Origin: Ylistrum balloti | Taxonomy: Eukaryota | Direction: 5' to 3' | Length of the DNA stretch: 64,000 bases | NCBI RefSeq assembly: GCF_031769215.1 | Contig: NW_026782002.1 | Coordinates: forward strand, 434,001-498,000 | Shown here: positions 22,001 through 25,000 of the stretch, piece after piece | Layout of the letters: every line of letters begins with the position of its first letter | Position numbering within the stretch: position 1 is the stretch's first letter | Made by a program: the position numbers and the translations under genes | The notes under the pieces: generated by a model | Seen by the model: the letters and a program-made list of their open reading frames with translations, nothing else | Told to the model about the DNA's origin: nothing | Database searches by the model: none

Positions 22001-25000
22001 CATATTTGAAATTCTTTGTTAAATGACTGAAAAGCTTAATTAGCTAGATGAGTGATACAGGCCCTTTGTCATCATTCATTTCCTTAAAATGCATAAGGTT
22101 GAGCATGGATCTATTCGGAAAATGAATAATAGATAGTATTTATACAAGACAAGTTTTATGTGTCTAATTTGAAAAACAGTCTGACAAACAAAATGTTTAA
22201 GATTGTATTTCATTTTCTTTCTAGGACATACCTCCTGATATTATGAAAGAAATTGACAAATGTTTGGTGGCCTGCTTGAATTCAAGAAAAATTGGTGGAA
22301 GTGATGTTGTTTCAGATTGCAGCATTTGCGCTTTACTGTATTCCCTCATCAGTCATTTTGGCAATTGCCCGAGTGATTACAACAACTGTGATAGGTGCCA
22401 GCGCGCATTTTGCTTGGTTTCCAAACATCTGCAGTTATGTATGGAGTCTAGAATCAGTGAAATGGAAGAAGTTTGCACATTAAAGATCTGTCAAAAAATC
22501 CAGAACAAATTCAAGAAGCAACCAGAGAAGATATCTCAACGTGGAAAAGAACTTTGGCCAAAATTGAAGAAATATCTAGCACGTTTTTCTCGAGGACCAG
22601 AAGATATTTCGATGGATGAGGGAGATGATTTTTTCAGCCTGTCGAGTATTCCATTAGGCAGCATTGGGGGATTACCATCACGTGTGTCCAGAAACAGCAT
22701 TGTCTTCCAGCAAAACTTAGAAAGCATTTCGGAAAACACAACGGCTAGACATCTTACTGGATCTCGATCTGAGCCATTTGCTAGAAAATCTGAAACTGGT
22801 GAAATACTTCATTCTAGAACTTTTCGACCTCGCCCATCAAGGCTGTCCGTTACTGATGAAAGTAAATCGCCTTATCCAGGTCAATCAAGGTCAGCTCCCT
22901 TGGCAAGAAAAACAGAAGGGAAGATAATGTACTCACTGGACCCTGATACACTTCCAAAATCAGAACGTAGAGTGTCCTTTTCCAATAACCAGGTAGAGGT
23001 TCACACTGTCAGATATCCACTATCACCAGAAGAACCACTTCAAAGCATTGCGGAGACTGCGCAATGTGCTTCTTTAAATACTGAGAAGGTCTATGGTGGG
23101 GATAGGACAAGTAGTCTCCCTTCAAATTTTTTTCCACCAAACAAGCTAGATGATGAACAGTTGATATCAGTCCAAATGAGACCATCAGGATACCCAGGGA
23201 TTGGAGAGGTAGTTTATGCCTTCAAGGAACAGCTTCGTTATGTTGCCCGGCACTGGAAAAAGATCAAAGAAAATTTCGAGAAAGACAAAACATTGGAGAA
23301 GAAACACTTACGAGAGGAAGGTGTTATACTTACAGAAAACAAGGTATTGTTCTCAGGACATTATTCTATCTTATAAAGAAAATTGATTACTCTATATATT
23401 TTAAGCCACTTTCAGGCACTTCATAAGTTATGGAGTTCTTAACTTAATGACCTAAATATTATAACATTTATAACACAAAGATTGTCTTATAAAATAGAGC
23501 AAGTGTTTTAAGCAAGGTTAAAAATGAAGGGAAATTCTAAGTGAATGTCAGAGAAGAGACACCAAAGTGCTATTAAAGACAACTGAGTAAATTTTTTATC
23601 ATAATTATTATTTGTCAGAAATATTTTTACAGTTTTTCTTGCTTAAGATCTTTCTTAACATTTTAAAAGTACACAATGTTCATATGCAAAATTACATACA
23701 TTGTAGATCACTATTAATTATTTTCATCTTCATTTTTCTTTTTGTAGGATAAGTTTTCCATTTTTCGGACACGTTACCAGAAGAATTTCCAGTGGATCCG
23801 TTTGACTCACTTAGGGACTGGAATGTCAGGCAAATGTCACTTGGCACAGGACTACTACACAGACTTCAAGTTCTGTATCAAGAAAGTGGGTCTATACTTA
23901 ATATATTTTCCAAAATTTTGGTTAAATAATTTTAACTCCACTTTTTTACTATTGTACAAAACGATAACTTCTTGTTGTTTTGTTCCATCATTCCCGCAAA
24001 AAAATATTGGTCTGCATTTTTCATTCCAAAATTAAAAAAAAAGGTTTTTATGATGTTGGTCTGTTATTTTTTCTTCAGTTATGGTTATTATTGCATAAAA
24101 TAGTTTTTTTTTTTCATTTTTGCCTGCAAAATTTTACAATTTAATGAACTCTTATATCAACTTTTCCTGTGATGATTTAACTTGTATTTTCAACCAATCA
24201 CCATGATACATAAGATGGTGGACTATTTAAATTGCCCTACGTCCCTGGTTTGTTGTCTCTCCGTAAACAATTTTTGTTATTGCTATTTCTTGAGAAGTCC
24301 TTGATTGTTCCCCTTGGTCACTAGTTGTACTGGTTTGAGTTTAGGACTAATCAGAAAAACAGATATCCAACTAGTGGCCTTCTTGGATTTTTTCATTAAA
24401 GTTTGTTATTGCTGTTTCTTGAGAAGTGCTCGATCGATCTTTCTGGAATCTCATGTAGATCCTCCTTGGTCAGAAAAATAAAATAGCGGACAGGCAGCCA
24501 TTTTGGACTTGGCAGTTAAAGATTAATATCACTATTTCTTTAAAGGATTAATATTCTGATTTGTTATCATTAAGAGCAAAAACAGAAAACAGAAGAGAAA
24601 GAACAAAGAAAGTTCAAACAATGGTGGGATTCCTCTTGAATCTCTTGTTACTTGCTGCATTGAAAGTGAAACTTTACCATGGACATAGAAATGTCTATGT
24701 CTGTGGCATTTTAAGCTTAAATAAGTCAGTTTTTCATCAGTATGTTTCAGACTTTTTCTAATTTGGCATATAAAAACAGTTTTATGAGTAATTAGTGTTA
24801 GATTATATAGTAGTAAAATGCAACATAAAGCAGCTGATTCAAGATGGTGTTGTCTTGTTTGTTGGCACAATGTCAAACTACCCAACATTAAACAACATGC
24901 TAATATGTCTCAGACTTTGAGATTAAGTTTTTTGTGTATGCCCATGGGCTCTTTATAGAACTCAGTATTTTTTCAAACCTTTCATGTTTTGTTTTGTTTC

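What the first reader, a model, noticed from the sequence alone, without database searches (positions are those of the whole stretch)
22252..22512. NIK-like kinase carrying a CBP/p300-type TAZ zinc finger
Seen in sequence: exon 22225-23343 encodes IDKCLVACLN...DCSICALLYSLISHFGNCPSDYNNCDRCQRAFCLVSKHLQLCMESRISEMEEVCTLKICQKIQNKF. Its Cys/His spacing matches zinc sites 2 and 3 of CBP TAZ2 almost residue for residue; site 1 looks degenerate (His replaced by Asn). It is in frame with the kinase exons, about 280 aa upstream of the kinase. Established: TAZ domains are known from CBP/p300 and plant BT proteins, and bind disordered acidic transactivation domains (RelA, STAT1/2, p53, HIF-1a). Vertebrate NIK and COT have none. 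Inference: this may be an unreported architecture in which the kinase binds Rel/STAT activation domains directly, competes with CBP for them, or is autoinhibited by its own acidic tails. I do not know of a description of this fusion but cannot check the literature.
Basis: partly seen in the sequence, partly recalled or inferred. Interest (0 to 1): 0.82.

Follow-up and report, generated by a model that had tools for sequence, protein, structure and literature searches.

The report
TAZ2-like zinc domain in mollusc NIK-like kinase
A scallop signalling kinase related to NIK/Tpl2 carries a real but divergent copy of the TAZ2 zinc-binding docking domain otherwise known from the CBP/p300 co-activators, and this unannotated combination is conserved across molluscs, though what the domain binds is unknown.

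Summary
The proposed function is not.

- **Gene.** Window 22225-23343 (+) is an exact exon (aa 743-1115) of Ylistrum balloti RefSeq LOC132545461, a 2186-aa "uncharacterized protein". Its kinase domain matches NIK/MAP3K14 best and Tpl2/MAP3K8 next.
- **Domain.** The first ~120 residues of the exon fall below Pfam's zf-TAZ cut-off (17.8 vs 25 bits). Five other lines point to TAZ2:
  - A 21-sequence family profile hits only p300/CBP TAZ2 in the PDB (1.5e-5).
  - hhalign against the scallop's own CBP TAZ2 gives 93.6 %, E 2e-7, with the zinc ligands in register.
  - Protein language-model look-alikes are all zf-TAZ.
  - The AlphaFold model ranks TAZ2 first among 48,161 PDB chains (Z 6.2).
  - The top ESM Atlas fold matches are TAZ families.
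- **Conservation.** C32, C35, H44, C55, C58, H68, C72 and C89 are invariant across those 21 sequences. In the fetched full-length orthologues (bivalves, gastropods, a chiton) the domain lies upstream of the kinase. An intron-less Argopecten mRNA contig joins the two.
- **Site 1.** It is remodelled rather than simply lost.
- **Function.** The core is near neutral (+3, against +13 for CBP TAZ2), so CBP-like capture of acidic activation domains is unsupported.
- **Novelty.** No paper or annotation of this fusion was found. The scan's only other note here is this same stretch.

The parts
13100..33888 (+). Whole gene: Ylistrum balloti LOC132545461 (P0058, 2186 aa), 16 coding exons
   Evidence: tblastn of P0058 gives 98-100 % identity over most exons, lower where hits run past exon ends. 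Exact translation blocks cover every exon.
22225..23343 (+). Exon 7 (aa 743-1115), phase 0 at both ends. It holds the TAZ2-like domain at its 5' end, a Ser/Pro-rich linker, and the conserved pre-kinase segment at its 3' end.
   Evidence: The orthologous exon in another mollusc (L001/P0001) has the same AG/GT boundaries.
22225..22590 (+). TAZ2-like domain plus a family-specific fifth helix (exon residues 1-122, aa 743-864)
   Evidence: AF2 model: pLDDT 76.9, helices at 4-19, 33-47, 56-77, 87-96 and 107-122. TAZ2 is the top fold match. Profile hits are to TAZ2 only.
22261..22329 (+). Remodelled zinc site 1: C13 (22261), C17 (22273), C32 (22318), C35 (22327). N19 (22279) sits at the canonical His position.
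   Evidence: C32 and C35 are invariant, C13 is nearly invariant and C17 varies. hhalign aligns N19 to the CBP His, and gastropods have His there.
22354..22398 (+). Zinc site 2: H44, C48, C55, C58 (H-x3-C-x6-C-x2-C)
   Evidence: H44, C55 and C58 are invariant. C48 is lost in caenogastropods, several heterobranchs and the chiton. The register matches CBP/p300 TAZ2.
22426..22491 (+). Zinc site 3: H68, C72, C84, C89 (H-x3-C-x11-C-x4-C)
   Evidence: H68, C72 and C89 are invariant in A2. C84 is present in bivalves and absent in gastropods and the chiton.
22543..22590 (+). Basic helix 5 (W111-x-K-x-x-K116-Y-L motif), absent from canonical TAZ2
   Evidence: W111 is nearly invariant and K116 invariant. 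Net charge is +3 to +6 in most orthologues. TAZ2 fold alignments stop at about residue 99-112.
23164..23343 (+). Conserved pre-kinase segment (aa 1056-1115), ending in the EEGVILTE motif that aligns to the N-terminal extension of crystallised NIK
   Evidence: Conservation island at 1056-1090 and from 1101 on. In the orthologue P0002 the alignment to NIK chain 4g3g includes this part. On its own the segment has no significant PDB hit.
23748..23885 (+). Kinase exon 1 (aa 1116-1161): glycine loop GTGMSG and the Lys of FCIKK
25004..25137 (+). Kinase exon 2 (aa 1162-1205)
   Evidence: Pfam Pkinase 4.9e-8.
26948..27093 (+). Kinase exon 3 (aa 1205-1252), catalytic loop HEDIK
27721..27979 (+). Kinase exon 4 (aa 1253-1338): ADNILL, DFG, activation segment
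   Evidence: Pfam Pkinase 9.8e-11.
28743..28897 (+). Kinase exon 5 (aa 1339-1389), end of the kinase domain

Best explanation
Exon 22225-23343 belongs to the scallop's only NIK/Tpl2-group MAP3K. Its first ~120 codons encode a true but divergent homologue of the CBP/p300 TAZ2 domain.

**Anatomy.** The domain has four amphipathic helices. They are presumably held together by three zinc sites placed at the helix ends. A fifth, basic helix specific to this family follows.

**Zinc sites.** Sites 2 and 3 keep the His-Cys-Cys-Cys pattern. Site 1 has lost its canonical His and most likely uses Cys13/Cys17/Cys32/Cys35 in scallops.

**Setting.** The domain sits in a long acidic disordered N-terminal region, about 270 residues before the kinase. 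Apart from the kinase itself it is the only N-terminal module conserved throughout Mollusca.

**How it most likely works (inferred, not shown).** It acts as a TAZ-type docking platform. It clamps a short amphipathic disordered segment of a partner (substrate, adaptor or regulator) and so brings that partner to the kinase. Its specificity differs from CBP TAZ2, because the strongly basic surface is not conserved.

**Shown:** the exon and gene model, homology to TAZ2, the predicted fold, conservation of the ligands, and conservation of the architecture.
**Inferred:** zinc binding, docking, and the identity of any partner.
For: **Gene**
- The exon is identical to aa 743-1115 of RefSeq P0058.
- Orthologous full-length proteins from Argopecten, Pecten, Mizuhopecten, oysters, mussels, unionids, Mercenaria, Haliotis, limpets, Littorina, Batillaria, heterobranchs and a chiton have the domain upstream of Pkinase.
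- Argopecten P0002 is an uninterrupted 6405-nt ORF on a 7028-nt contig, so one mRNA carries both parts.

**TAZ identity**
- Pfam zf-TAZ is the only recurrent family: 15 of 21 members match, best E 9.6e-6, and the window scores 17.8 bits.
- The top 10 language-model look-alikes are all zf-TAZ, best score 0.92.
- The family profile against the PDB returns 13 hits, all p300/CBP TAZ2, best 1.5e-5.
- hhalign against the same genome's CBP TAZ2 gives 93.6 %, E 2e-7.
- The AF2 model has pLDDT 76.9 and pTM 0.69.
- The best three of 48,161 PDB chains are TAZ2 (Z 6.2, 5.1, 4.9; 87 of 92 residues at 3.3 A).
- The Foldseek top hit is TAZ2 with probability 0.98.
- The top five Atlas family sets all carry zf-TAZ, TM 0.50-0.54.

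**Selection**
- Eight ligands are invariant at 25-37 % pairwise identity.
- The domain is one of only four conserved islands in 2186 residues.

**Kinase**
- NIK is the best PDB match, Tpl2 is second, and all other kinases lie far below.
- The catalytic motifs are intact.
- There is no close paralogue in the genome.
Against: - The domain is below Pfam's curated cut-off (17.8 vs 25 bits).
- Foldseek E-values are not significant (0.39). Z 6.2 is modest for a helical domain (note).
- One ligand per site varies. C48 and C84 are missing in many gastropods and the chiton, and C17 is missing in mussels and others. Three-zinc binding is therefore not assured everywhere.
- There is no RNA evidence from this species: the only run holding the exon is genomic DNA.
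- Nothing here tests binding. The complex prediction of TAZ-like domain against kinase gave no answer.
- Net charge is not conserved, which argues against a CBP-like ligand set and leaves the partner unknown.
Confidence: 0.72

Rival explanations
1. Autoinhibition in cis. The TAZ-like domain, with its basic fifth helix, binds acidic disordered tracts of the same protein. This keeps the kinase closed or masked until a signal releases it. It would be analogous in logic, not in sequence, to the N-terminal negative regulatory domain of vertebrate NIK.
For: The flanks are very acidic: aa 1-742 has net charge -49, aa 1400-2040 has -33, and aa 2040-2186 has -19. In the scallop the core plus helix 5 totals about +8.
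Against: No conserved acidic or amphipathic island exists elsewhere in the protein that could act as a fixed internal ligand. The domain's charge is neutral to negative in several lineages, for example Littorina at -8. The complex test against the kinase domain gave no answer.
Confidence: 0.2
2. The domain binds acidic transactivation domains of Rel/NF-kB, STAT or p53-type factors as CBP TAZ2 does. The kinase would then dock directly on transcription factors or compete with CBP.
For: Homology to TAZ2, and not to TAZ1, is clear. The kinase belongs to the group that controls NF-kB processing in vertebrates.
Against: CBP TAZ2 of the same genome has net +13 over 78 residues. The kinase domains range from -8 to +6. 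No Rel or STAT partner was tested. Sequence identity to TAZ2 is only about 20 % outside the ligands.
Confidence: 0.12
3. A structural relic. This would be a decayed or convergent Cys/His-rich helical segment that only stabilises or spaces the N-terminal region, without ligand binding and perhaps without all three zinc ions.
For: One ligand per site is dispensable in some lineages. Pfam is sub-threshold. Fold-match scores are modest.
Against: Eight ligands, and several non-ligand positions (L64, W111, K116), are held across Bivalvia, Gastropoda and Polyplacophora, while the surrounding ~1000 residues are not alignable. The ligand register with TAZ2 is exact for sites 2 and 3.
Confidence: 0.1
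4. A gene-model artefact. A separate TAZ gene would have been wrongly merged with a downstream kinase gene.
For: No RNA reads from this species were available.
Against: The same exon encodes both the TAZ-like domain and the conserved pre-kinase segment. Intron-less transcript-type contigs in other species encode both parts: P0002 on 7.0 kb, P0016 on 4.9 kb, P0021 on 7.1 kb and P0065 on 5.3 kb. All splice junctions around the exon are in phase.
Confidence: 0.02

Closest known systems
CBP/p300 TAZ2 (CH3) domain, Pfam zf-TAZ PF02135
   Same: The fold and helix order match. The His-x3-Cys...Cys-x2/4-Cys pattern of sites 2 and 3 is kept. The x8 and x9 spacers between sites are identical. TAZ2 is the only family found by profile, profile-profile and fold searches.
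   Different: - The score is below the Pfam cut-off.
- The canonical site-1 His is absent, with other Cys in its place.
- The site-3 loop is 7 residues longer.
- There is an extra basic fifth helix.
- The core is near neutral instead of +13.
- It sits in a protein kinase, not an acetyltransferase.
Vertebrate NIK (MAP3K14)
   Same: It is the best solved match of the kinase core (133.5 bits). The ADNILL/ADNVLL and EGV(I/L)LTE motifs are shared. The protein is long and largely disordered, with the kinase in the middle.
   Different: No ISIIAQA-type TRAF3 motif was found. The pre-kinase segment alone has no significant match to NIK. By my own knowledge of its domain map, not tested here, vertebrate NIK has no TAZ domain. 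The mollusc protein is more than twice as long.
Tpl2/COT (MAP3K8)
   Same: It is the second-best kinase match, only 6 bits behind NIK. One mollusc orthologue is named MAP3K8 by its source.
   Different: The Tpl2 match covers the kinase core only. Tpl2 is a short protein with no TAZ, which is my own knowledge and was not tested here.
Other TAZ architectures: plant BTB-TAZ (BT) proteins, nematode TAZ-only proteins, and the orphan TAZ gene of this genome (L004)
   Same: They show that TAZ is a mobile interaction module outside CBP/p300. They appear among the fold matches.
   Different: None is fused to a kinase. The orphan scallop TAZ is 40 % identical to CBP TAZ2, yet barely related to the kinase family's domain (hhalign probability 5 %).

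Membership tests
zf-TAZ (PF02135) | Score at or above Pfam's gathering cut-off (25 bits) | tested here: not met
   17.8 bits for the 102-aa segment and 16.9 bits for the 127-aa segment. 15 of 21 family members match at E <= 0.1, best E 9.6e-6.
zf-TAZ (PF02135) | Sequence homology to TAZ detectable by profile methods, with the ligands in register | tested here: met
   The family profile hits only 13 p300/CBP TAZ2 sequences in the PDB, best 1.5e-5. hhalign to the scallop CBP TAZ2 gives 93.6 %, E 2.1e-7.
zf-TAZ (PF02135) | Three His-Cys-Cys-Cys zinc sites at helix ends | tested here: inconclusive
   Sites 2 and 3 are complete in the window and in bivalves. Site 1 lacks the canonical His (N19) but has C13/C17/C32/C35. 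One ligand per site varies across molluscs.
zf-TAZ (PF02135) | Four-helix TAZ fold | tested here: met
   This rests on a predicted model only: AF2 pLDDT 76.9. TAZ2 ranks 1-3 of 48,161 chains at Z 6.2-4.9. The Foldseek top hit is TAZ2 at probability 0.98. The top five Atlas sets are zf-TAZ.
zf-TAZ (PF02135) | Zinc binding and zinc-dependent folding | not testable with these tools
   This needs metal analysis and spectroscopy of the purified domain.
zf-TAZ (PF02135) | Binding of disordered amphipathic or acidic activation domains | not testable with these tools
   Only indirect evidence exists: core net charge is -8 to +6 against +13 for CBP TAZ2.
NIK / MAP3K14 | Kinase domain closest to NIK | tested here: met
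   The eleven best PDB sequences are NIK (133.5 bits). Tpl2 follows at 127 bits, and no other chain reached the E 1e-28 cut-off. The margin over Tpl2 is small.
NIK / MAP3K14 | NIK-specific N-terminal extension of the kinase domain | tested here: inconclusive
   For the orthologue P0002, the alignment to NIK chain 4g3g starts about 65 residues before the glycine loop and includes EGV(V/L)LTE. The segment alone has no significant hit.
NIK / MAP3K14 | N-terminal TRAF3-binding motif (ISIIAQA type) | tested here: not met
   A regular-expression search of P0058 finds none. A divergent motif cannot be excluded.
NIK / MAP3K14 | One-to-one orthology shown by phylogeny with vertebrate NIK and Tpl2 | not tested
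The genome holds no second NIK/Tpl2-like kinase.

The most novel reading that the evidence does not exclude
Molluscs, and perhaps other lophotrochozoans, wire their single NIK/Tpl2-type kinase to its targets through a co-opted TAZ2 domain that reads disordered motifs of NF-kB-pathway proteins (Rel/p100-like factors, IkB, IKK or TRAFs). This would be a kinase-TAZ docking mechanism with no vertebrate counterpart. It may be the ancestral state that vertebrate NIK lost and replaced with its TRAF3-controlled N-terminus.
Probability: 0.12. Interest if true: 0.8.

Novelty: new variant of a known kind. Interest (0 to 1): 0.55.

Why it matters
**For TAZ domains.** They are studied almost only as the activation-domain receptors of CBP/p300. 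A TAZ2 homologue built into a protein kinase, and held for the whole history of a phylum, would extend the use of this fold from transcriptional co-activation to kinase signalling. It also offers a naturally re-tuned (non-basic) TAZ surface for comparison.

**For NF-kB evolution and mollusc immunity.**
- A published in-silico survey could not identify NIK or Tpl2 orthologues in Aplysia (PMC9334734). Here Aplysia LOC101854452 falls in this family.
- Another study found no NIK-like protein in basal animals (PMC5700166).
- Recognising this family gives mollusc immunology a candidate upstream kinase for non-canonical NF-kB signalling, together with a handle (the TAZ-like domain) for finding its partners.
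- Several of these species are farmed (scallops, oysters, mussels, abalone), so the pathway also matters for work on disease.

Tried and rejected
- **RNA evidence in this species.** The only public run holding the exon (X1) covers introns at even depth, so it is genomic DNA. It gives no splice information.
- **Single-sequence PDB search of the domain.** No hit. The pre-kinase segment alone also has no meaningful hit.
- **Complex prediction, TAZ-like domain (aa 743-870) against kinase (aa 1050-1400).** The verdict was 'no answer', score 0.00. This is not evidence either way.
- **Atlas feature search of the kinase and of the C-terminal 147 residues.** The kinase gives generic STE/MAP3K clusters, including MAP3K8. 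The C-terminus gives nothing above 0.81. Searches failed on a length limit and were re-sent correctly.
- **Word-based searches from the Haliotis and P0065 kinase domains.** They reached only molluscs, two proteins of unknown taxon (P0023, P0065) and unrelated kinases. They cannot bridge to other phyla, so absence outside Mollusca is not shown.
- **Taxon of P0023.** No encoding contig is on record.
- **Exact spliced reconstruction of all 16 exons by splice-site search.** It failed at some split codons. It was replaced by exact block mapping.
- **Merged gene model.** Rejected; see the rival explanations.
- **Descent from the genome's orphan TAZ gene (L004).** Rejected: hhalign probability is 5 %.
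- **Zinc-site geometry in the model.** Coordinates are not exposed to scripts.
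Full report
**1. What is in the sequence**

It starts after a polypyrimidine tract and AG, and ends at AAG|GTATTG.

The window comes from the scallop Ylistrum balloti. RefSeq protein LOC132545461 (P0058, 2186 aa, 'uncharacterized protein') maps to window 13100-33888 in 16 exons. 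Each exon is an exact translation block, and 22225-23343 equals aa 743-1115. The exon is in phase 0 at both ends. It joins the upstream exon (ending 20255) and the first kinase exon (23748-23885) in frame.

An orthologous exon on a 2.3-kb genomic contig of another mollusc (P0001/L001, 54 % identity) has the same boundaries. Similarity there stops at the splice sites.

**2. Is the exon joined to the kinase?**

Three things say yes.

- The exon itself ends in the conserved pre-kinase segment. That segment continues without a break into the kinase in all orthologues.
- Argopecten irradians P0002, whose 90 % cluster also holds a RefSeq protein of the same length (P0025), is 63 % identical over the whole exon. 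It is encoded as one uninterrupted 6405-nt ORF on a 7028-nt assembled contig. The scallop gene spans 20 kb with 15 introns, so that contig must be an mRNA. Three further transcript-sized contigs carry both parts: P0016, P0021 and P0065.
- Every long protein found with the domain profile has a Pkinase domain roughly 190-370 residues after the end of the profile match.

I could not get RNA reads for Y. balloti itself. The single run that holds the exon is genomic DNA, with even depth across introns.

**3. Is it a TAZ domain?**

Pfam zf-TAZ matches below its cut-off (17.8 bits against 25; profile positions 21-68 of 72). The call therefore had to be earned by other means.

- *Features.* A protein language-model search of the 102-residue segment returns zf-TAZ clusters as all ten best hits (0.92, 208 of 256 features).
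- *Relatives.* An exhaustive HMMER scan of 1.84 billion representatives with a two-sequence profile found 24 proteins. I aligned 21 domain segments from these as A2.
- *PDB by sequence.* The A2 profile hits 13 distinct PDB sequences at E <= 10. All are p300 or CBP TAZ2, and the best is 1.5e-5.
- *Own genome.* The same genome has canonical TAZ domains: a CBP-type gene on contig C367 and a further gene on C54. hhalign of A2 against the scallop's own CBP TAZ2 gives 93.6 % probability and E 2.1e-7, with every ligand of sites 2 and 3 in register.
- *Family-wide Pfam.* 15 of the 21 members match zf-TAZ individually at E <= 0.1 (best 9.6e-6). No other family recurs.
- *Fold.* AlphaFold2 on A2 gives pLDDT 76.9 and pTM 0.69, with helices at 4-19, 33-47, 56-77, 87-96 and 107-122.
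  - The ligands sit where TAZ ligands sit. The His lies near the end of one helix or, for H68 in this zinc-free model, within an over-long helix. A Cys follows four residues later. Two Cys lie at the start of the next helix.
  - Foldseek ranks TAZ2 first (3t92, probability 0.98, TM 0.50/0.55), although its E-value of 0.39 is not significant.
  - An exhaustive alignment to 48,161 PDB representatives ranks CBP/p300 TAZ2 first, second and third (Z 6.2, 5.1, 4.9; 87 of 92 residues at 3.3 A). TAZ1 is seventh.
  - The ESM Atlas fold search returns five zf-TAZ family sets first (TM 0.50-0.54). There is then a drop to 0.36-0.41 for unrelated folds.

Each line is modest on its own. Together they point to one family only.

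**4. The zinc sites**

In A2 (25-37 % identity to the window outside scallops) the invariant columns are C32, C35, H44, C55, C58, H68, C72, C89 and K116. C13, L64 and W111 are nearly invariant. A wider set of 30 orthologues, aligned locally with the A2 model, shows the following.

| Site | Ligands | Variable position |
|---|---|---|
| 2 | H44, C48, C55, C58 | C48 is lost in caenogastropods, several heterobranchs and the chiton |
| 3 | H68, C72, C84, C89 | C84 is present in bivalves, absent in gastropods and the chiton |
| 1 | C13, C17, C32, C35 | C17 is present in scallops, oysters, limpets, caenogastropods and the chiton |

Gastropods carry His at position 19.

So site 1 is remodelled rather than simply degenerate. 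Bivalve domains have twelve candidate ligands. Whether all three sites hold zinc needs experiment.

**5. How it differs from CBP TAZ2**

- The site-3 loop is seven residues longer.
- A fifth helix follows, with a conserved W-x-K-x-x-K-Y-L motif.
- The core is near neutral: +3 in the window and -8 to +6 across orthologues. The scallop's own CBP TAZ2 has +13 over 78 residues.

The basic surface is what lets TAZ2 bind many acidic activation domains. That is established knowledge of the family, not something tested here. Its absence argues for a different ligand set.

**6. The kinase**

The kinase core of P0058 matches NIK best (eleven NIK sequences, 133.5 bits). Tpl2/COT follows at 127 bits, and nothing else reaches E 1e-28. 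With the pre-kinase segment included, the orthologue P0002 aligns to NIK chains from about 65 residues before the glycine loop, including EGV(V/L)LTE. On its own that segment has no significant hit.

The glycine loop, the catalytic Lys, HED, DFG and SPE are all present. No NIK-type TRAF3 motif is found. The genome has no second NIK/Tpl2-like kinase. I therefore call it a NIK/Tpl2-group MAP3K, closest to NIK. One-to-one orthology is untested.

**7. Distribution and selection**

The kinase family with the upstream TAZ-like domain occurs in these groups:

- Bivalvia: scallops, oysters, Pinctada, mussels, unionids, Mercenaria.
- Gastropoda: Haliotis, Lottia, Patella, Littorina, Batillaria, Aplysia, Biomphalaria, Lymnaea, Candidula, Elysia, Plakobranchus.
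- Polyplacophora: Liolophura.

Two divergent members (P0023, P0065) are of unknown taxon. The family members without a hit are fragments or partial or chimeric models.

Across 20 full-length orthologues, the only conserved islands in the 2186 residues are:

- the TAZ-like domain (aa 748-862);
- the pre-kinase segment plus kinase (aa 1056-1391);
- a short basic motif (aa 1943-1955).

The tools could not bridge to other phyla. Absence outside Mollusca is not shown.

**8. Mechanism**

The best-supported reading is a TAZ-type docking module that brings a disordered segment of a partner to the kinase. This is inferred from the fold and from what TAZ domains do elsewhere.

Autoinhibition through the protein's own acidic tracts is possible, since the flanks carry net -49, -33 and -19. 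But no conserved internal ligand exists. A complex prediction of the domain against the kinase gave no answer.

The charge data weaken it.

**9. Novelty**

Full-text searches found no paper that describes a TAZ domain in a protein kinase, or in a mollusc NIK. All source names are 'uncharacterized protein', 'protein kinase domain-containing', or inconsistent MAP3K2/8/14 labels. None has a precomputed zf-TAZ hit.

An Aplysia immunome survey reported that NIK and Tpl2 orthologues could not be identified (PMC9334734). Aplysia LOC101854452 is a member of this family. Another study found no NIK-like protein in basal animals (PMC5700166).

The parts are known and the combination is not. I rate it a new variant of a known kind.

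Noticed in passing
window 25429-26028 (intron between kinase exons 2 and 3): A tandem array of a 156-bp unit (3.9 copies) belongs to a very high-copy genomic repeat. The summed contig depth in run X1 reaches about 145,000, against about 10 for unique sequence. It produces spurious ORFs on both strands.
   Followed up: partly
window 35673-38153: A 30-bp minisatellite with 82.5 copies at 80 % matches lies downstream of the kinase gene. It gives long false ORFs on both strands (MRVTCYNLKS-type repeats).
   Followed up: no
window 52270-52902 (-), with further minus-strand ORFs at 43.6-49 kb: The neighbouring gene on the minus strand has an Ipi1_N domain (4.6e-19). It is a TEX10/Ipi1-type component of the Rix1 ribosome-maturation complex.
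   Followed up: partly
L004 (G000:C54:357430-357612): This is a third canonical TAZ domain in the genome, outside the CBP gene (zf-TAZ 33.5 bits). It is 40 % identical to CBP TAZ2 but barely related to the kinase family's domain. I did not check the IkB neighbourhood.
   Followed up: partly
P0051 (Aplysia californica LOC101854452), TAZ-like domain at aa 838-957: Aplysia has a member of this NIK/Tpl2-like family. A published survey (PMC9334734) reported that no NIK or Tpl2 orthologue could be identified there.
   Followed up: partly
P0023 (MetaClust UPI00078A1E12, 2552 aa): This divergent family member of unknown taxon has two Pkinase stretches after the TAZ-like domain. That suggests either a tandem duplication of the kinase or a model error.
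   Followed up: no
window 2448-3248, 11088-11914, 47595-48360, 50174-51024; N run at 56944-57074: Four further tandem-repeat arrays have periods of 53, 36-145, 60 and 37 bp. There is also a 131-base assembly gap, which I left untouched.
   Followed up: no
P0058 aa 1943-1955 (window about 30830-30870): A short basic motif (KKQLHLNLSPSKR) is the only conserved island in the long disordered C-terminal half across molluscs. It could be a nuclear-localisation or docking motif.
   Followed up: no
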